NCBI GenBank assembly: GCA_964057225.1
Contig: OZ059898.1
Coordinates: forward strand, 13,516,001 to 13,580,000
Origin: Auanema rhodensis
Lineage: Eukaryota; Animalia; Nematoda
Direction of reading: 5' to 3'
Length of the DNA stretch: 64,000 bases
The notes below the pieces were generated by a model. That model ran no database searches, was not told the origin of the DNA, and saw nothing but the letters and a program-made list of their open reading frames with translations. This document shows positions 32,132-41,090 of this stretch, in pieces (position 1 is the first letter of the stretch; the number at the start of each line of letters is the position of its first letter). The position numbers and the translations under genes are program-made.

Positions 32132-35100
32132 TTATGAATTTCCGAAATTAAAACTTCCGGGAACAACAGCTTCAGCATTGAATGAATAGCCACCTTGCTC
32201 CAAAACTTTCTTAGACTGCTCAGCCTTGACGTGATTTTCACAAGTCTGTAAGCATAAGTTGACTTAGACTGTGTTCGAAAAGTAATAGACACCAACCTTA
32301 TCCAATTCTACAAGCTGTTGCTTCTCATTATCTTCCAGATTATTAACCATCTGCATAAACAAGACTTGTTCGGTAGACTTGAAGTCTTAAAGTCAAAGAA
32401 AATTAAATTTAACTCTGGTTGTAACTTACGTTCCATAGAATTCTTGAAAAGGACAAACACATCTGGGCCATTTTCGTCGTCTATGATACATTGGTATTGC
32501 TCAGTGTCAGTTTCATCATCATCGTCATCATCGTAATCGGAATCATTATCATCGTCACTCTCTCCTCTTCCATCTTTAGCAAGATGATCCAAATATTCAA
32601 GAGTAAGCTCATCAATCTCATCATCATCATCAGAGAGATCGTCGTCAATCTTTCGATGATCCCCTTTATCACTGTCATCGTCGCTATCAGAATCCATGTC
32701 GGCCTTTCTGTTGTCAGCTTGAGTTTTCAATGCGCGTTGAAGTCCACTGAATAGTTTCACACAACATTGAAGAACCTTCTTGGAATCATATGAGAATATG
32801 GCTGGCCTAACAGCTTGCGGGAGATGCATAAGAGTGCACCAAGCGAAAAGAGCCATACGTCTAAACTTTACTTTTTTAGGAAAAAAAATAAGAAAACAAT
32901 CTAACCTGTTATGGAGTCCTGAGAATTTGTCACTGAGCTCAACAAGCTGTTGAGAAATAAAATCAAGAGGATTAGGATGATCAGGAGCTAATTCTTTAAG
33001 CACTTTATAAGCTAATTCAGTATTTGTGTAAAGAGCAGCAACAACAACAAGAACAAGCATATGCTTGAGCTCAGAGAGTCCATCTTCGAAAGGCTTAGTT
33101 AATCTCTCTAGTGCAATAACAATTATGGCTGGATAAGCCTAAAAGAAAGACAATTATTGAAGAAATGAAGAAAACTACACACCTCATGAATCATGCTACT
33201 GCATTGCAAAATAACAATTTCAAGCATTTTGGCGGCGTAAAGTTGATTTTCATCACCTTCATCACCATTTTCTAAAACTAATTTACACATATCAATCACA
33301 GCGTTAAGTCGTTCAGGTCTAGCAAGGAAGCTTTCAGTATCCGTTACAATGTATAGATGAATCACAGGTACCAAATCTAAAAAATAGGACGATATGAACG
33401 AACTTGGTAAAACCAGAATCTTACCAGCAAACTGAAGAAGAACACCTTTGTCTTCCTTGAACATCTGATAAATTTTATCAAAAACGCTCCACATAGGTTC
33501 GCTGACATAAACAGAAATCAGGGATTGAATGAGTAGGAGGACTTCATCATAATAATCTGAAAAAGATTGCAGTGTGTACATAAGGTTTCAAAAATTAAAA
33601 CTTACCAATGTTACCAGTTTCAAAAACATGGACAATGATTTGCAGGACATGAGCTTCGATTTGAACCATAATTTGACGGTGATCACTAACAACCTGAATG
33701 AATGAAATAGTAAGACGTATTATAAACAGAATTAACCTCGAGAATATTGGAGAGAGAACTGATAATGCTCATCAAAGCTGGAGTTCTTTCTTCAGCAAAT
33801 TCACTCTTGATCATTGAAAGGAAAAGAGTGCACTAAAATTGAAACTGGTTAAGAACTCAAAAGGCTATAACAGACCATCTGCTCGGCGACGTTGTTAGCA
33901 ATAGGAATTACTTCGTCCATAAACTCATCCATAAGTTTATCCATAACCGAAACAGTGTCCTCAATCTGTGTATGAGCACACAATTGTAAAACATTTGGAA
34001 TAATATCAGGCACGTAAGGTCGGAATAAATCAGAAACTAAAGAACGAAGTTATTTCAAACTTTTTATAAAATTCATACCGTCTTCTTGATCGTCAAGAAG
34101 AGCTTCAATAGCTAAAGCAGCTTCTACCTTGGCCGGCAATTCTTCTTCTGCAGAACATAGAACATGAACTAATAATTGAATGGCCTTCTTCAGGATCTTT
34201 TTTCCACTGAAAATAGTAGCCGAGAATTGCTTCAAGCACCATGCAGCTCTTGATCGGACGAATCGAGAATTATCAACGAGTCTATTGATAACATGAGCAT
34301 CAAGAAGCTTCTCAACATCTTTTCTGTATTTCTGAAACCCCACATAAAATTTTGCATAAAAATGATCACGAACCTTGCTCTTACACAGTTGTTCAGCTAA
34401 TTCTCCAATCATACGAAGAGCTCCATCAATCTCACGAGGATTTTGAGAAGAAGAAAGAGTCTAAAAGGCAAATTAGCACAGTTATGAAAGAATAAAACGT
34501 ACTCCTATAGCAAAAGCCAAAACTGGCTGAATGATGTCTTTTCTTCTAGCTAAAGCGGCTAACAAGCTTCCGGCTCCGAATCCCGGATTGTGAATATCTT
34601 CGAAGATATCTAAAAACTATCTTCATTATCTCTGAATAGACTATATTCAAACCATATTTGAAACGAATGTATTCCTCAACATCATCTTCCCACATTTCCT
34701 CATCATCATCGCTATGACAAAGCAGAGGGAAGAGAACAGTTGTAATAATCACCTGAAAATCGATATAAAGTACAAACGACGTTTCAAAGTGATCAAACTT
34801 GAGCATGAGGTTTAATAACTTTCCAGCTGAAGGAATGAGAAACAGCTGTGTTCAAAACGCTCAAAGCCAGGAGAGTAACTCTGTCAGTGACAAAAATACC
34901 ACTCCGACGATCATTAAGAATCTTCATCATGACCTCAGAACAAGAGACAGAGAACTTTTGAACGAAATGCTTTCCAAACTCTGCATAACCTTTCTCACTC
35001 TGGCCTGGAGCACTGTATCTGAAAATTAACAAAAGTTTAAAATACATTATGTTGAGCTATAATTACCTTTCGAAAATGCGATCCACAATCTTACCAGCCC

Positions 35101-38100
35101 ACTTCTTGCACTTCCACCAAACTGTCAAACTACGTTCTTCGAAGTCTTCAATAGTGTTGACCTAGAAAGATATGGTATGCTAATCTGGTATGAAATTAAA
35201 CGAATAATACCTCTTCTGAAACAGGACGAAGAAGTACTTCTCTACACAATTCAATCCAGGAATCCATAGATTCAATTGGCACCATTTCAAAATTAAGGTT
35301 GAACTATAACTCAATAATTCAATTCTGAACACAAAATCAAATATACCTGTATAAGAGCAAAGAAAATTTTGAGAAGAAGCTTCTGAAGAGCTACTGATTC
35401 CTCGGAAGAATTAGGAGCCAATTGAATGAACCGTTCATAGAGAATTGGAAGAAGTACTTTCATAGAATCAATCAAAGGTTGACGTTCTGAAACTCTCTTG
35501 TACCTATAAAACAAAGAAAGAAGAAAATGAGATCCGAATGAAGCTTACTCGTATATCTTGGACAACCTATAAATTAGAAGAAGAGCTCCATGAAGAGCAC
35601 CAAAATCAGGAGTTAACAATTTTGTTTGAATCTCCGATAAGAGTCCGGGCCAGTTTCCAGGGAATTCAGTACGCAGCATAAACTGTCCAGCAACACAAAG
35701 TTGGGGTCTTAACAATATATAAATGAATATGTGATATTCATTCACGAATTCTACCGTGTAAAGTCTCCAGATAAACAGATAGCTTCCAAAATATTAAGCT
35801 TCAAGAGACTCTTATCCTCGTCAGGAATGATGAATGAATTATTCTCGTTAGCAGCAATAAAGCCATTTTCTGATTGGTCCTCGTCCTTATCATTCTAAGT
35901 AAAAAAAAAGAAGTCAATAGAGCTGAAAAGGGATTCCAAACCTCCCAGTGCTTGCAAATAGTATTTTTGAAATAAATGACAGCAGCTTGTCGTACTGCAG
36001 TTGATAACGAGCCATCACAAGTGATTTTGAGGAGCTCCGGAGTGAAGCCTGGCAATTGGGCGCACTGAAAATGACAACACATTTACAAAGAACTCCAAGA
36101 AATAATTAAAAAACCCGAATCCCATATTTCAATATTTACGAATAATTTTCCGAAGTACAGAGATGCACAGATTAGCAAACCGGTCTCATATCAAAACTTT
36201 ATGAATTTTGCAGAAAACTACATAAGAGCAAAAAATAATATGCAGATAAAAAGCAAAACGAGATAGAACACCGGCACAATCAAGGGTACAGGAGATAAAG
36301 TAGGGACAACGAGAACAAAAATGCAAATTTAACTTCTATCTTATAAACAGAGAAAACAATAATAACCCGATATAATAATTAACAAGCACACATTTCCGCC
36401 TTTTCGTAATATTTGTTAGCAAGTTTTCCTTTCATAGCTTCCATGGCAACTTCAGCAGCTTCGTTGTAAAGATTATAAGCTCTTTCAAAATCCTGAGTTA
36501 AACCGCAACCTCCCTCCTGATACATTTCAGCCATGCGGGCCAGAATTTCATAGCGAGGACGATACGTTCCTTCTGAGTCATCGTCACTGAATCCTACTGC
36601 CTTTTGATACCAAGTTATAGCATTAGGGAAGCTAGGTTGAGACCCGGCGCCCATTCGCCTTCCAGTTTCAAAAGCTTCAGCAACAAACAACATGGATCCT
36701 CGATCTCCCATTTCGGCGGCCGTTTCCATAAGTTCAAACGCGAATGCTTCTCGATCATAATCTTCATTCTCATCACCATCTTGACCGTCATGACGCCAGT
36801 TTTCATCTTCTCCTATATCTTTTAGTAACTCATGAGGAGTACCATAAATCATCTGAGCAACAGTGATGATGGCTTCAAGTACACCACAGCGTCGAGCAAC
36901 ATCCAAATGATATAGGGCGGATGTGGTGTCGTACTTGATAGATCGGATACTGTCTTTTGAGTTATCACTTTCATCGGTCGGGCAGAGAGCTCTCTTCTTT
37001 TCTTCGTTATCTTCTTCAGGCAAGAAACGTCCTAACTCGTGATATCTAGCCAAATCCAAATGAATCTGCCCAAGAATCAAGGTGTGGTTAGCAATTCTAT
37101 TACATTCTTCCGATAACTGTTGAAGTTCAATAGCGGAAAGAACTCCGGCAGGAACAGATTGTTTCCGATTAACCATCCAAAAGTTTTCTCTCTCAGTCTC
37201 TCTTGTTAGACGAGAACTTCCCATGCTGCTGGTTCCGATTGAGCTTCCCATACTATCATAACGATCACGGGTCTTTCGATCTCGTTCAGTTCTTTGGACT
37301 TGAAGATTGGGAAGAGCTACTTTACGTAGAGGGCGAGGCATTTCTTCAGATACATCCTCATCATCGTTAGTAAATTTCAAAGGCTCAGAATCATCGTCTT
37401 CATCCTCCAAATCATCAACGGCTCGGAATGAGTCGAGGTGTACATCAGCTGTTGCTTCAGATAGGCAATCTTCACAAACGCAATCGTCATCGTGTACAGC
37501 TTTACTGCGATCTGTAGAGCATCTTGAGCTTCGTCTGGAGGTACCACCACTGCTTGATGAATTGCGACTCCTCATAGAGATAGTTCTTACACGAAGACAT
37601 TCCATAGCATCGTCTTGTTCCATTCCTTGCATAATAGCAGAACAAGCAGTACTGCTTGGTTGACGACTAAACATTGTAGCTTGGTTGTGGTTGATAACAT
37701 AAGTAGAGTCTTCAACAGCTTTACGTTCCGTATCAGAAAGATCAAACTCAGTTAAACAGAGTGAATGACAAATGTCATTACACTTGTGAGAATGGAAAAA
37801 CAGTGCCATTCCTCTAGTTCCAAGATTTCCATCACCGTAATCGGTTCCAAGTACAGTATGGATTTGAGGATCAGTATAAAGATCTCCTACTCCTTGAATA
37901 TCAACAACGATCATTTGATGTCCAGAGCGTTCAAAAGTGAAGTGTGAGAAGGCTTGGGGCGTCTTCCGGGCAATATCAGAAACAAAACCAGAATTGGAGT
38001 TATATTTCACGTATTTTCCTTCGATATAATGTTCCAAATGATAGAGGGGTTCTCCAGGTAGATCAATTATCTCTAATACGCACATTTGAACAATGTCGAT

Positions 38101-38839
38101 TTTTTTGGGGGGGCTGTAGCGATTGAATTCTTCTGCCCAAAGCTTAGCATCCATTTGAAGTTTGACATCTTCAAAAAGTACGTTTCTGTCCACTTCTTGT
38201 ATATACTTCTTAGCAACGTAATTTTGAGCAAAACTCCAGTCATTACTAGTGGCCAGGCTGCTTAATTTCTTTAAACGGTAACATTCTCTCATAGCACCAT
38301 GAGCAAAAGCTTCTGGATGTAGACGAACTTCAACAATGTCTTCAGTCCATGTTTTTCGAATTGCAGAATAACGAGAGCGCTTCGCACGAAGAATAGGGTA
38401 AGACTCAATGTGAAAGCTTGACCACGGATCAGTTTTCGTACGATAGGCACGATGAGCGGCTTTACGCCAACGATGCATAAGACTTTTGATTCGAATTTCT
38501 CGTATAGCAGGATCCTCCTCGACTCTGGGCAGCATGCGCACATCATCAGATAGAAGGACAGTCAAATTCCGCCAGTCAGCCCCATCACTCGTTGACGTCG
38601 AGGTGCGAGTTCGCCGAGCTGCTGCTATACCATCTAGCTCCCGATGATTGCAAAGCTGGAAGATAGTCCATGAGCAGGGGATGACTGGCGCTATTAATAT
38701 TTTGGGACAATTTTGAAATTTTTTTCTACTGAAACCCCGAATTAAAACTACTAACCTGGTCAAGAAATTGACTGGCCTCCTTTGTATCATCGGGGCGAGT
38801 AGTGGCCTCAAGAGCTCGGATAAGATTCTCCCTGTCCAT
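32132..38839 (-). CDS. Importin-7 (IPO7/Msk-like karyopherin-beta), multi-exon; first coding exon 38839-38756, second coding exon starts at 36064
   Basis: MDRENLIRALEATTRP...QFLDQ|CAQLPGFTPELLKIT...VRQAAVIYFKN is an IBN_N domain. Also WWKCKKWA, DEEMWEDDVEEYIRFK, FVRSRAAW, an acidic loop, and C-terminal GGYSF..VVPGSFNFG typical of IPO7. Confidence 0.9.
36379..38655 (-). CDS. efk-1: Eukaryotic elongation factor-2 kinase (alpha-kinase), one uninterrupted coding exon nested in an importin-7 intron
   Basis: CaM-binding LMHRWRKAA, GAMRECYR, YVAKKY, LQMDAKLWAEEFNR, YNSNSGFV, PQAFSHFTFERS, DIQGVGDLYTDPQIH, GDGNLG, HSHKCNDIC, C-terminal SEL1-like repeats and GKLANKYY. The 5' boundary is set at an in-frame TTCCAG acceptor (AG at 38657-38656). 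Confidence 0.95.
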   Translation of the reverse strand, partial: LCNHRELDGIAAARRTRTSTSTSDGADWRNLTVLLSDDVRMLPRVEEDPAIREIRIKSLMHRWRKAAHRAYRTKTDPWSSFHIESYPILRAKRSRYSAIRKTWTEDIVEVRLHPEAFAHGAMRECYRLKKLSSLATSNDWSFAQNYVAKKYIQEVDRNVLFEDVKLQMDAKLWAEEFNRYSPPKKIDIVQMCVLEIIDLPGEPLYHLEHYIEGKYVKYNSNSGFVSDIARKTPQAFSHFTFERSGHQMIVVDIQGVGDLYTDPQIHTVLGTDYGDGNLGTRGMALFFHSHKCNDICHSLCLTEFDLSDTERKAVEDSTYVINHNQATMFSRQPSSTACSAIMQGMEQDDAMECLRVRTISMRSRNSSSSGGTSRRSSRCSTDRSKAVHDDDCVCEDCLSEATADVHLDSFRAVDDLEDEDDDSEPLKFTNDDEDVSEEMPRPLRKVALPNLQVQRTERDRKTRDRYDSMGSSIGTSSMGSSRLTRETERENFWMVNRKQSVPAGVLSAIELQQLSEECNRIANHTLILGQIHLDLARYHELGRFLPEEDNEEKKRALCPTDESDNSKDSIRSIKYDTTSALYHLDVARRCGVLEAIITVAQMIYGTPHELLKDIGEDENWRHDGQDGDENEDYDREAFAFELMETAAEMGDRGSMLFVAEAFETGRRMGAGSQPSFPNAITWYQKAVGFSDDDSEGTYRPRYEILARMAEMYQEGGCGLTQDFERAYNLYNEAAEVAMEAMKGKLANKYYEKAEMCAC

Positions 38840-41090
38840 ACCTTGGATAAGAAAATACAGTTATTTAAACAATAAGAATTGAATTACCTGTCCACGGGTT
38901 CTTGAACTATGGTAGAACCAATGAACAAAACGTGGATTTAAGGGATATTATTACCTATAATTGTGGATTAATTAGAAAAACTATTAATATAATGAAAGAA
39001 AGAATATTAAACAGCGATTGATAGCATGGATGAAAGTTAAAATCGATAGCACAATCGTAGAAGAGCGGCACGTTTTTTAATTTTAAACGAGAGGTCGAAA
39101 GTTTACAGCTTGTAAACAACGTGCAGTGTAAAGATTCAATTCACGGAACGAATAAATTTTGAATGCGAATTATTGAAATAGATGTAACGAGAAAAAGAAT
39201 TTTATAGTACAAACCCGGTTTTTCGAGATTGTGTTGACCAAAATAGAAATGGCCAAAAATATTTGTCTTTTTTTTCTTTGAAGGAAATATGAATATAATT
39301 AAAAAATATAAGGAATTCGTTATCACAAGCTTGAGAAATCCAGTTCGATATTTTGTCAATCTTTTATTAAGTGGTCGTAGGACCTTCATAGATTCTCCCT
39401 TGTTTGATGTGATGAGCCATTTTTGACAAATTAGGAAATGCTACCTTGTTATTGTATCTTAGCGAAATTTCTAGAAAAAATGAATAGCTGATCGAAAAAA
39501 CTGAGTCTGGTTTAGAAAATTCGTCACAGTTGTCCGGAAATGACCGTTTGAAATAGATAAATAGATATGACTCAACTTTGGCTCCGACTGAACAAGAAAG
39601 CCAATTCTAATTATTCCCTTTTGTGTTTGCATTTTAAGTGCAGTGAAAGAGGTCTGATGAAATCTTCAGTCTTGTGTTCAAGCAAGGTTTTCGACGACTT
39701 CTCCAAAAAAGATATTTTCGGAGTGTTAAGGTTAGCACTTCTAGCACATGTCCACTTTATTAAATAAAAATATCTGAATGAACTTCGAAGGAAGTTCCGT
39801 TTTAGAAAAACCGATCAATGTTAACATAAAGACTGAAGCTTTTCACAAAAGTTTTCGTGGTACTTCAGTCAAAATTAGCAGACAATAGACATAGCATAAA
39901 CACCGAAAAACTAAATGTCTTAGTATGGTCTTATATAGTATTCGGAGAAAATAGTCGAAGTGAATATAAATGTCAAATTTCACCAATTTCAACAATTAAA
40001 ATAGAAAGGACGTTTGAAGTTTGTTGGCTGATCCACATAAAGCATCAGTTTCACTTCGTTCTCGCGACATAGACTGAACACCCTAGTCAGCCGAATAAGT
40101 ACCGTAATTCCCTTGTTCGATATTATACATATATTAGACAATTACACGTTTCTTTAAAAGTTAATCAATTGATTTACAACTTGATTTACCATGTGTTTTT
40201 TTACTTTTCGAATTTTAAAACTGTAGCGTTTCTAAGCGCTAAGATTAGGTGATTAATTTAATGTCTTCAGTTTTCATAAAGTTTTCTCGGCAGTAATTAT
40301 AATTTAAAATCAATGAAAAACACAAAAGATTAACTAAAAAGTCGCTATTGTTTTCGGTTAAACACATTTATATGTTGTATGGTGTTAAAGTCAGCAGTGC
40401 TAAGAACACAAAGAGTACTCGAGAAAGCGGCTTGAAGTTTTGAATACAATTGGTATTAAGGCTCGACACACAAGTAAGAAATAGTTTATCGGCTGGCTCA
40501 TTTCTTCTCTTGCGTTTTCCATTCATCACTCTCTGTCGTGGTCAATCAGTCGGTGTCAGTAAGCCAGTCATCTTCTAGGCGAAGGATCATACACAGAATC
40601 TGTTGATGTTACACGAGACCATGGGAAAGACAATTCGAGAAAATGAGATTAAAGAAATGGTGAAAGTGAGTGAAAGAGCAACAGAGTTTGACAGAAGAGG
40701 AAAGCCCTGAAGACACTGTTTACAAATGGGCGGAGAAGCAGCTGGAGTAGCACCGGTGTCCTATGGTCATCATCATCATCATCATGGTCGTTTGTTGAAA
40801 AACTGTGACCCCTGAGGGCACATATCTCTCGTCGTTGCTCTCTTATGTCTAGCATGAGCACATATCTAGTTTTTCTTCTTGACATTCTTAGTCACCTGGA
40901 GTTGTCCGCCTCCTAATGACAGACAGTCTGTTGATGGATTCACTATGGAGTGGTCTAGTCTCATACAGAGCACAAAACTCTTCCTCATTATATTTCAGTT
41001 TATACTACTTGTGTTTTTCTTTAACATTTATCTGAACTCTTTTAACACTCTGTAATTTAAATAAACTGATTGATTTCAGAAAAATCAAAG

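What the first reader, a model, noticed from the sequence alone, without database searches (positions are those of the whole stretch)
36065..38955. Intronless eEF2 kinase nested same-strand inside importin-7, apparently sharing its first coding exon
Seen: importin-7 coding exon 1 (ATG 38839, MDRENLIRALEATTRPDDTKEASQFLDQ) ends at a phase-0 donor (GT at 38755). It has two in-frame acceptors. The proximal one is TTCCAG|CTT at 38655 (100-nt intron), which opens the eEF2K frame. The distal one is TTTTCAG|TGC at 36064 (2691-nt intron), which continues the IBN_N domain. The eEF2K exon runs 2277 nt with no intron, while neighbouring genes have an intron every ~100-250 nt. It has no room for its own promoter. 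Its first internal in-frame ATG (~38535) is preceded by several out-of-frame ATGs, and a CATAAA poly(A)-like signal near 36200 follows the stop. Established: C. elegans unc-17/cha-1 makes two unrelated proteins from one pre-mRNA by a shared first exon and alternative processing; importin-7 imports ribosomal proteins; eEF2K inhibits elongation under stress. Inference: mutually exclusive splicing and polyadenylation chooses between a growth-promoting import factor and a translation brake. The kinase may have arrived as a retrocopy or lost its introns to remain skippable.
Basis: partly seen in the sequence, partly recalled or inferred. Interest (0 to 1): 0.9.

Follow-up and report, generated by a model that had tools for sequence, protein, structure and literature searches.

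The report
Two genes sharing one start exon
In this Auanema-like nematode one promoter and one start-codon exon are spliced either to an intronless eEF2 kinase gene sitting in the first intron or, skipping it, to the rest of importin-7. The layout is conserved in many clade V nematodes, including hookworms and Haemonchus, and usually comes with an RNA hairpin around the kinase's splice acceptor.

Summary

- **Both junctions exist in RNA.** Transcript contigs from four runs of one study carry 38756>38655 (exon 1 to eEF2K) and 38756>36064 (exon 1 to importin-7 exon 2). No contig covers either intron.
- **Shared 5' end.** An SL1 fragment, a 67-nt untranslated exon 0 and a 46-nt intron precede the shared ATG.
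- **Chimeric kinase.** It must start at the importin ATG (28 shared codons). A conserved peptide motif lies upstream of the kinase's first own ATG.
- **Conservation.** I found the same nesting in Auanema JU1783, three unnamed rhabditids, five strongylid loci and Pristionchus. One unnamed rhabditid has the exon1-efk junction in a transcript contig. Diploscapter and C. elegans are not nested, and no Caenorhabditis importin-7 was found.
- **New here.** A stem of 14-19 bp, longer in strongylids, pairs the end of the short intron with the kinase exon and encloses the proximal acceptor. It covaries across seven species. I infer that it masks this acceptor so the donor can wait for importin-7.

The closest known cases are C. 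elegans unc-60 and unc-17/cha-1. I found no paper describing this locus. An unchecked note from this scan reports another shared coding first exon elsewhere in this genome.

The parts
38955..38960 (-). SL1 trans-splice acceptor TTATAG|; the first transcribed exon base is 38954
   Evidence: the loose end at 38956 reads CAAACTTG(G) on the + strand. Its reverse complement CCAAGTTTG plus the genomic AG gives the 3' end of SL1. Compare the SL1 sequence on the C. elegans efk-1 contig.
38888..38954 (-). Exon 0: shared 5' untranslated exon (67 nt, no ATG)
   Evidence: Joint 38838/38885 with cut +3, resolved to GT..AG; sequence.
38842..38887 (-). 46-nt intron in the 5' UTR, ending 2 nt before the ATG
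38756..38841 (-). Shared exon 1: start codon at 38839 plus 28 codons of the importin-7 N-terminus; phase-0 donor
   Evidence: Its homologue begins importin-7 in other nematodes and begins eEF2K gene models in strongylids.
38656..38755 (-). Proximal intron (100 nt), removed in the kinase mRNA
   Evidence: The joint 38655/38756 is present in all four runs. The bin depths are fully accounted for by flanking contigs, so coverage inside the intron is zero.
38727..38738 (-). Invariant intron block GGGGTTTCAGTA; role unknown
   Evidence: Identical in the window, Auanema JU1783 and the SRR31646649 species; a related TTTCAGTA occurs in L009.
38677..38695 (-). 5' arm of the conserved stem (core CGCCAGTCATCCCC), intronic, 21 nt upstream of the proximal AG
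38565..38583 (-). 3' arm of the stem (core GGGGCTGACTGGCG), inside the kinase exon, coding DGADWRN
36379..38655 (-). Single coding exon of eEF2 kinase (efk-1 orthologue), 758 codons plus stop; with exon 1 it gives a 786-aa product
   Evidence: One RNA contig covers it without a gap.
36198..36378 (-). Kinase 3' UTR with variant poly(A) signal CATAAA at 36203-36198; RNA contigs end at 36200-36247
   Evidence: The signal region ATAAAGTTTTGA is conserved in Auanema JU1783.
36065..38755 (-). Distal intron (2691 nt), removed in the importin-7 mRNA; it contains the whole kinase exon and its 3' end
   Evidence: The joint 36064/38756 is present in all four runs.
32138..36064 (-). Importin-7 exons 2 onward (13 RNA-supported exons down to 33734; homology continues to about 32138)

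Best explanation
This is a single transcription unit in an Auanema-like rhabditid.

**Shown**
- The primary transcript is SL1 trans-spliced at 38955/38954.
- A 46-nt intron in the 5' UTR is removed.
- The donor of exon 1 (ATG plus 28 codons of importin-7) is joined to one of two acceptors.
- The proximal acceptor, 100 nt away, gives the eEF2 kinase mRNA, which ends near 36200 after a CATAAA signal.
- The distal acceptor, 2691 nt away, skips the whole kinase exon and its 3' end and gives importin-7.

**Inferred with good support**
- The kinase is translated from the shared ATG and carries the first 28 importin-7 residues. The junction is in frame.
- No ATG precedes the shared one in the mRNA.
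- The conserved motif RRT..TSDGADWRNL lies upstream of the kinase's first own ATG.

**Inferred, about 0.55**
- A conserved RNA stem pairs the last third of the 100-nt intron with the DGADW codons and encloses the proximal acceptor. In strongylids a much longer hairpin contains that acceptor.
- The stem would mask or delay the acceptor. Some transcripts would then keep the exon-1 donor free until the importin-7 acceptor is transcribed about 2.6 kb later.
- The stem would therefore set the kinase-to-importin ratio.

**Also inferred**
- The kinase lacks introns because inner splice sites would interfere with skipping it.
For: **RNA evidence**
- all four runs hold joints 38655/38756 and 36064/38756 with GT..AG ends. 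The kinase contig (2439-2486 nt) carries 30 letters of exon 1 at its 5' end. There is no branch at the acceptor, so no comparable SL-leader form exists.
- twelve further importin-7 introns are skipped, there is an SL1 fragment at 38956, and depth upstream is zero. The bin depths are reproduced exactly by flanking contigs alone. Coverage in 38656-38755 and 36065-36199 is therefore zero.
- a transcript contig from another species (L004) starts with 30 nt coding QKQAGEFLDK, the end of importin exon 1. It is fused in frame to the kinase.

**Conservation of the layout**
- the annotated kinase starts with the importin exon-1 peptide in two Ancylostoma species, Necator, Dictyocaulus, Strongylus, Teladorsagia, Cooperia, Trichostrongylus and Heterorhabditis. 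In Auanema JU1783 the annotated product at this locus is 786 aa, the length of exon 1 plus the kinase exon.
- the order exon 1, kinase, exon 2 holds in nine genomic loci, including P. pacificus. The kinase is one exon in six of them.
- JU1783 has no in-frame ATG until far inside the conserved N-terminus.

**The stem**
- it is the top or only inverted repeat in the region in seven species. P. pacificus has a different perfect 14-bp stem around its in-frame candidate acceptor.
- 86% of cells are paired against 29-50% when slid. The covariation score is 0.34 against 0.04-0.13. None of 500 shuffles reaches the observed value.
- Necator's TGG>CGG change in the 3' arm is matched by A>G in the 5' arm.
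- the minimum-energy and centroid folds of both Auanema species contain the stem.
- strongylid hairpins have z of -3.2 to -5.0.
- the 5' arm is not coding in JU1783 (a stop codon) and is read in another frame in L005.

**Precedent**
- (PMC3875643): in unc-60, repression of the proximal acceptor through elements at the 3' end of intron 1A is the switch.
Against: - The RNA data are assembled contigs from one study, not reads. They cannot phase exon 0 with each 3' half or give isoform ratios, and they drop rare forms such as a minor SL1-kinase mRNA.
- No poly(A) tail was seen. The contigs end at 36200-36247, inside or upstream of CATAAA.
- There is no protein evidence for the chimeric N-terminus.
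- The stem's direction of effect is untested.
- Whole-region fold z-scores in the Auanema group are modest (-0.9 to -1.9).
- The seven aligned species form only two clades, so there are few independent compensatory events.
- One nested species (L009) lacks a comparable stem.
- In strongylids an upstream in-frame acceptor might make the 5' arm coding.
Confidence: 0.8

Rival explanations
1. The kinase is an independent nested gene with its own start (own TSS in the intron, or SL1 at 38655) and is translated from Met 38535. The exon1-kinase junction would be a by-product of a cis donor meeting a trans-splice acceptor.
For: C. elegans efk-1 is an independent SL1 gene with SL1 17 nt before its own ATG. 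Several strongylids and P. pacificus have an in-frame ATG soon after the acceptor. Contigs can hide minor isoforms (caveats).
Against: - In all four runs the kinase contig runs 30 nt into exon 1 with no branch at the acceptor, and the intron has no coverage. A second species shows the same.
- The conserved motif and 40 in-frame codons lie upstream of Met 38535. Indels relative to JU1783 are in frame.
- JU1783 lacks that Met.
- An out-of-frame ATG at 38546 opens an 85-aa ORF.
- Frame compatibility of donor and acceptor is kept in at least five lineages.
Confidence: 0.07
2. The locus is an operon-like polycistron. The kinase mRNA is cleaved near 36200, and the downstream importin-7 exons receive SL2 at the 36064 acceptor, about 135 nt further on.
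For: The spacing of about 135 nt between the kinase 3' end and the next acceptor is typical of nematode operons (sequence; my own knowledge of operon spacing).
Against: The importin-7 contig carries 30 nt of exon 1 across the 2691-nt joint in all four runs. No SL loose end is reported at 36064. Without exon 1 importin-7 would lack its ATG and first helix, and the next Met is about residue 126.
Confidence: 0.03
3. The shared-exon splicing is real, but the stem has no role in splice choice. The 3' arm would be conserved because it codes DGADW. The 5' arm would be a relic of, or part of, an alternative coding exon extension (VASVGTTQSEC in strongylid models). The complementarity would be incidental or serve another purpose, such as editing or Microprocessor-type cleavage.
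For: - Strongylid gene models differ in the acceptor used, and some place the 5' arm in coding sequence.
- L009 lacks the stem.
- Fold z-scores are modest in the Auanema group.
- Only two clades were sampled.
Against: - The 5' arm is non-coding in JU1783 (stop codon) and frame-shifted in L005, yet is nearly invariant. It is better conserved than exon 1.
- Changes at synonymous sites, and even at the Trp codon in Necator, are compensated in the other arm.
- P. pacificus has an unrelated perfect 14-bp stem in the same position relative to its candidate acceptor.
Confidence: 0.15

Closest known systems
C. elegans unc-60 (UNC-60A/UNC-60B ADF/cofilin locus)
   Same: A common first exon carrying the start codon is spliced either to a proximal exon set with its own variant poly(A) signal or to a distal set. 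The proximal 3' end lies about 90 nt before the distal acceptor; here it is about 135 nt. In unc-60 the switch is repression of the proximal acceptor through cis-elements at the 3' end of the short first intron (PMC3875643).
   Different: - unc-60 shares only the ATG, and its two products are paralogues. Here 28 codons are shared by two unrelated proteins.
- The unc-60 regulators are proteins (ASD-2, SUP-12) on CUAAC and UGUGUG elements. Here the conserved element is an intron-exon RNA stem.
- The proximal unc-60 unit has introns. Here it has none.
Cholinergic locus unc-17/cha-1 (VAChT nested in the first intron of ChAT)
   Same: Two unrelated proteins come from one promoter. [quoted passage not shown] In mammals and flies the nested VAChT is intronless (my own knowledge).
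   Different: The shared exon of the cholinergic locus is untranslated, and the two products act in one pathway in the same cells. Here the shared exon is coding, so the kinase gains an importin-derived N-terminus, and the functional link is only conjectural.
C. elegans efk-1 (F42A10.4), the orthologous eEF2 kinase
   Same: It has the same Alpha_kinase plus Sel1 architecture, with 53% identity over 94% of the query.
   Different: C. elegans efk-1 has SL1 directly before its own ATG and an unrelated N-terminus. No Caenorhabditis importin-7 was found.
Structure-controlled splice-site choice (docking/selector pairing in insect Dscam; hairpins that sequester 3' splice sites)
   Same: Conserved, covarying base-pairing next to a competing splice site (resemblance from my own knowledge; not tested).
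   Different: Here a single stem bridges an intron and the following coding exon. It would govern the choice between two whole genes rather than between cassette exons.

Membership tests
eEF2 kinase (alpha-kinase family; efk-1 orthologue) | Complete alpha-kinase catalytic domain | tested here: met
   PF02816, E 2.6e-59, profile positions 1-185 of 185.
eEF2 kinase (alpha-kinase family; efk-1 orthologue) | C-terminal SEL1-type repeats and full-length similarity to named eEF2K proteins | tested here: met
   PF08238 hit. Identity is 88% to Auanema JU1783, 61-66% to strongylid eEF2K, 53% to C. elegans EFK-1 and about 42% to vertebrate eEF2K.
eEF2 kinase (alpha-kinase family; efk-1 orthologue) | Calmodulin-binding segment N-terminal to the kinase domain; phosphorylation of eEF2 | not testable with these tools
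   Needs biochemistry.
Importin-7/8 (RanBP7, Msk) | N-terminal IBN_N domain and roughly 1000-aa HEAT-repeat body orthologous to importin-7 | tested here: met
   Single exons are too short for Pfam. The RNA-spliced 626-aa N-terminal product is open. The window matches Auanema JU1783 importin-7 (PF03810) over residues 9-1022. The exon-1 peptide matches importin-7 N-termini of other nematodes.
Shared-first-exon alternative-processing locus (unc-60 / cholinergic-locus type) | One 5' exon joined alternatively to two separate downstream exon sets | tested here: met
   Both joints are present in four runs, and the kinase junction is also present in a second species.
Shared-first-exon alternative-processing locus (unc-60 / cholinergic-locus type) | The proximal unit ends at its own poly(A) site inside the intron of the distal unit | tested here: inconclusive
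   Kinase contigs end at 36200-36247 next to CATAAA, and 36065-36199 is uncovered. No poly(A) tail was seen.
Shared-first-exon alternative-processing locus (unc-60 / cholinergic-locus type) | Single promoter and 5' end for both mRNAs | tested here: inconclusive
   There is one SL1-exon 0-exon 1 contig and no coverage upstream. Contigs cannot phase 5' and 3' halves, and SL1 hides the TSS.
Shared-first-exon alternative-processing locus (unc-60 / cholinergic-locus type) | Control by repression of the proximal acceptor through cis-elements in the short intron | not testable with these tools
   A candidate element was found: the covarying stem. Its function needs reporters or editing.
Nematode SL2 operon | The downstream gene is trans-spliced (SL2) shortly after the upstream poly(A) site | tested here: not met
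   Exon 2 of importin-7 is joined to exon 1, not to a leader, in all four runs.
Processed retrogene | Intronless copy of an intron-bearing parent, with insertion hallmarks | tested here: inconclusive
   - The kinase is intronless in seven nested species, while un-nested Diploscapter has at least 10 exons.
- P. pacificus keeps two small introns, one a single codon from a Diploscapter intron.
- The tree shows no separate paralogue clade.
- No A-tract follows the 3' UTR.

The most novel reading that the evidence does not exclude
The conserved intron-exon hairpin is a tunable switch, sensitive to elongation rate, helicases, RNA-binding proteins or temperature. It would divide one pre-mRNA between a translation brake (eEF2K) and a ribosomal-protein import receptor (importin-7). 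That would give clade V nematodes, including hookworms and Haemonchus, a hard-wired growth/stress rheostat that C. elegans has lost. The shared 28-residue importin N-terminus would also have a function of its own in the kinase.
Probability: 0.2. Interest if true: 0.85.

Novelty: new variant of a known kind. Interest (0 to 1): 0.72.

Why it matters
- **A rare gene arrangement.** Only a few loci are known where one promoter and first exon serve two different genes by alternative splicing plus polyadenylation. This one differs because the shared exon is coding and gives two unrelated proteins the same start and first 28 residues.
- **Old and widespread.** It occurs from Pristionchus to strongylid parasites. 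The model species C. elegans lacks it, which may be why I found no paper describing it.
- **Testable.** The covarying stem around the proximal acceptor is a concrete hypothesis for how a promoter-proximal acceptor is held back so that a distal gene can be expressed.
- **Explains annotation errors.** Fused kinase-importin models and importin-7 models with bogus first exons occur in Heterorhabditis, Trichostrongylus, Necator, Dictyocaulus and Auanema JU1783.
- **Cis- to trans-splicing.** The comparison with C. elegans, where SL1 sits directly before efk-1's own ATG, is a possible case of a cis-acceptor becoming a trans-splice acceptor once the upstream donor is gone.

Tried and rejected
- **Failed look-up.** The Auanema JU1783 kinase model P0001 was not on record. 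I reached the locus through its importin-7 model instead.
- **Rfam.** A scan of 35900-39200 gave only a sub-threshold SNORD105 hit on the opposite strand (E 0.16), which I treat as noise.
- **Duplex-energy shuffles.** Intron against exon energies (the first attempt timed out) are noisy because long duplexes allow many loops. They give z of -1.3 to -5.2. I rely on the covariation counts instead.
- **RNAalifold.** It recovers the 10-bp core but prefers a local hairpin for the inner part. My 20-pair helix was tested separately.
- **A second long-range pairing.** GTCCCAAA in the intron pairs perfectly over 10 bp with TTTGGGAC about 55 nt before the distal acceptor in JU1783 (I15). In the window only about 6 bp pair, and the block is absent in L005. 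I did not adopt it.
- **Coding through the intron.** In the window the kinase frame stays open through the 100-nt intron and into exon 1. JU1783 has a stop there and L005 a frame shift, so I rejected this.
- **Kinase tree.** It is unresolved within clade V and neither supports nor excludes a retrocopy lineage.
- **Literature.** Searches for efk-1 with importin, eEF2K with importin 7 and nematode, and efk-1 with intronless returned nothing.
- **Other efk copies.** Whether this genome has a second, intron-containing efk could not be checked. Only a note on a vWA-alpha-kinase gene elsewhere turned up.


Full report
**1. The observation**

- An ATG at 38839 opens 28 codons that end at 38756 in phase 0, with GT at 38755.
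- TTCCAG|CTT puts a first exon base at 38655, giving a 100-nt intron.
- TTTTCAG|TGC puts a first exon base at 36064, giving a 2691-nt intron.
- The frame entered at 38655 runs 2277 nt to a stop at 36379. It encodes a complete alpha-kinase domain (E 2.6e-59) and a Sel1 repeat.
- The best match is the eEF2 kinase of Auanema sp. JU1783, at 88% identity. Strongylid, Pristionchus and C. elegans EFK-1 orthologues follow. The window therefore comes from an Auanema-like rhabditid.
- The 28-codon peptide is the usual N-terminus of nematode importin-7.
- The exons from 36064 downward match importin-7 of JU1783 over its whole length, down to about 32138.

**2. RNA evidence**

Four runs of one study hold the stretch. 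Their record does not say RNA, but laying their contigs shows that they are.

- Twelve importin-7 introns of 42-49 nt are skipped with GT..AG ends (resolved).
- Depth upstream of 38956 is zero.
- The bin depths around the two large introns are reproduced exactly by summing the flanking contigs alone. This is my arithmetic on the figures. It means no contig covers 38656-38755 or 36065-36199.

- The kinase contig (2439-2486 nt) covers 38655 down to 36200-36247 without a gap. It carries 30 letters of exon 1 at its 5' end.
- The importin-7 contig carries the same 30 letters across the 2691-nt joint.
- Thirty letters is what a k=31 assembly graph leaves at a fork. So the end of exon 1 has two successors, and the kinase acceptor has one predecessor.
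- A comparable SL-leader form of the kinase mRNA would have broken the contig at the acceptor.

Two features are new.

- A 46-nt intron (38887-38842) ends two bases before the ATG.
- An untranslated exon 0 (38954-38888) is preceded in three of the four runs by loose letters. Their reverse complement, together with the genomic AG, is the 3' end of SL1. Compare the SL1 on the C. elegans efk-1 contig.

**3. Translation**

The evidence points to translation from the shared ATG.

- Exon 0 has no ATG, so the shared ATG is the first in both mRNAs.
- The donor is phase 0 and the proximal acceptor opens the kinase frame, giving a 786-aa product.
- The kinase's first own in-frame ATG (38535) lies 40 codons inside the exon. 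It sits downstream of a motif (RRT..TSDGADWRNL) conserved in all nested species.
- An out-of-frame ATG that opens an 85-aa ORF precedes it.
- In JU1783 that Met is absent, the differences in this segment are in-frame, and the annotated product is also 786 aa.

**4. Conservation of the layout**

The order importin exon 1 (always 28 codons, phase 0), short intron, kinase, importin exon 2 is found in the following loci:

- the window and JU1783 (L008);
- two unnamed rhabditids (L005, L009);
- Dictyocaulus (L010), Haemonchus placei (L011), an unnamed strongylid (L006/L007) and Necator (L003);
- Pristionchus pacificus (L001).

In L006/L007 and Necator only exon 1 and the kinase were seen; importin exon 2 lies beyond the fetched stretch.

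Further support:

- A transcript contig from yet another species (L004) begins with 30 nt coding the end of importin exon 1, fused in frame to the kinase. This is independent RNA evidence.
- Gene models begin the kinase with the importin peptide in two Ancylostoma species, Necator, Dictyocaulus, Strongylus, Teladorsagia, Cooperia and Trichostrongylus.
- In Heterorhabditis and Trichostrongylus the two genes are fused outright.
- Several importin-7 models have lost their true first exon.
- The kinase is a single exon in six of the nested loci. P. pacificus keeps two small introns.

Species that are not nested:

- Diploscapter has at least 10 kinase exons and no importin-7 within 10 kb.
- C. elegans has SL1 17 nt before its own ATG.
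- Two importin-7 searches returned nematodes of several clades, and insects at 35% identity, but no Caenorhabditis. This suggests the host gene was lost there. A word-filtered search is not proof.
- In Mesorhabditis, Steinernema, Toxocara and filariae the two genes sit on contigs of different length. That is indirect evidence only.

**5. A conserved stem around the proximal acceptor**

Aligning the window with JU1783 and L005 shows that the last roughly 37 nt of the short intron are better conserved than exon 1. That segment is complementary to the DGADW codons about 95 nt downstream.

- In the window the arms are 38695-38677 and 38583-38565, with 16 of 19 bases complementary and 93 nt between them. 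The acceptor lies inside the loop.
- The same pair is the top or only inverted repeat in JU1783, L005, Necator and L006. P. pacificus has an unrelated, perfect 14-bp stem flanking its in-frame candidate acceptor TTGCAG|TGC.
- On a seven-species alignment the Auanema acceptor TATCTTCCAG|C aligns with strongylid TATGTTGCAG|C.
- RNAalifold recovers the 10-bp core.
- A 20-pair helix has 86% of cells paired, against 29-50% when the partners are slid. Its covariation score is 0.34 against 0.04-0.13, and none of 500 shuffles reaches it.
- The changes include GCT>GCC matched by A>G, GGG>GGT matched by C>A, and in Necator TGG>CGG (Trp to Arg) matched by A>G.
- The 5' arm is not coding in JU1783 (a stop codon) and is read in another frame in L005. 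Its conservation is therefore at the RNA level.
- The minimum-energy and centroid folds of both Auanema sequences contain the stem.
- In strongylids it extends to a hairpin of about 45 bp that contains the acceptor, with z of -3.2 to -5.0.

Limits of this evidence:

- Only two clades are sampled.
- Whole-region z-scores are modest in the Auanema group.
- One nested species (L009) has no such stem.
- Some strongylid gene models use an upstream in-frame acceptor, which would make the 5' arm coding.

**6. Mechanism**

- *Shown:* one SL1-capped 5' end, and one donor with two acceptors in RNA.
- *Consistent but not directly shown:* a kinase 3' end near 36200, since contigs end there and no poly(A) tail was seen.
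- *Inferred:* the proximal acceptor is 100 nt from the donor and is transcribed about 2.6 kb before the distal one. It has to be held back for importin-7 to be made at all.
- In unc-60 exactly this step is the switch. ASD-2 and SUP-12 bind elements at the 3' end of intron 1A and repress the exon 2A acceptor, and the proximal poly(A) signal is a variant about 90 nt before the distal acceptor (PMC3875643).
- Here the conserved element in the same place is an RNA stem. I propose that it masks or delays the acceptor and so sets the ratio (about 0.55). The opposite sign, or another role such as editing or cleavage, is not excluded.
- The correlation between nesting and loss of introns fits selection against inner splice sites. 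A retrocopy origin is not excluded either. The P. pacificus introns, one of them a single codon from a Diploscapter intron, and the unresolved tree lean slightly against it.

**7. What is not supported**

Nothing here tests whether the choice responds to growth or stress, or whether the 28 importin residues do anything in the kinase. Contig depths cannot rank the isoforms.

**8. Novelty**

- Searches for efk-1 with importin, eEF2K with importin 7, and efk-1 with intronless found no paper.
- The kind of locus is known from unc-60 and unc-17/cha-1.
- The variant is new in three respects: a shared coding exon for two unrelated proteins, wide conservation in clade V but not in C. elegans, and a covarying intron-exon stem at the decision point.

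Noticed in passing
window 38727-38738 (minus): A second invariant block in the 100-nt intron, GGGGTTTCAGTA. It is identical in the window, Auanema JU1783 and the SRR31646649 species, and TTTCAGTA occurs in L009. It looks like a consensus 3' splice site only 27 nt from the donor, perhaps a decoy or U2AF site. Its role is unknown.
   Followed up: partly
window 38706-38713 and about 36113-36122; L008 3517-3526 and 6013-6022: GTCCCAAA in the short intron is complementary to a TTTGGGAC-like block about 55 nt upstream of the distal (importin-7) acceptor. The pairing is a perfect 10 bp in JU1783, about 6 bp in the window, and absent in L005. It could bridge donor and distal acceptor, but it is not robust.
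   Followed up: partly
L003 10148-10161 and 10256-10269 (Necator americanus): The otherwise invariant Trp of the DGADW motif is Arg in Necator (TGG>CGG). The paired base in the intron arm has changed A>G, which keeps a perfect 14-bp stem. RNA pairing seems to have been kept at the cost of a conserved residue.
   Followed up: partly
window 32138-36064 compared with 36379-38655: Between the two Auanema species importin-7 is much more diverged than the nested kinase. Aligned segments are mostly 47-68% identical in amino acids, against 86-88% for the kinase.
   Followed up: no
L002 (C. elegans efk-1 transcript contig), bases 35-76: SL1 is joined 17 nt before the efk-1 ATG, and no Caenorhabditis importin-7 turned up in two searches. 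This fits loss of the host gene and conversion of a cis-acceptor into a trans-splice acceptor.
   Followed up: partly
Database gene models P0008, P0179, P0124, P0126, P0149: Annotation artefacts caused by the nesting. Kinase and importin-7 are fused in Heterorhabditis and Trichostrongylus. Importin-7 models with invented first exons occur in Auanema JU1783, Necator and Dictyocaulus.
   Followed up: yes
window 38656-38811 (minus): In the window the kinase reading frame stays open through the whole 100-nt intron and into exon 1 in another frame, giving an 810-aa mechanical ORF. JU1783 and L005 close or shift it, so this looks coincidental.
   Followed up: yes
If true, this gene arrangement may recur in this genome.
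   Followed up: no
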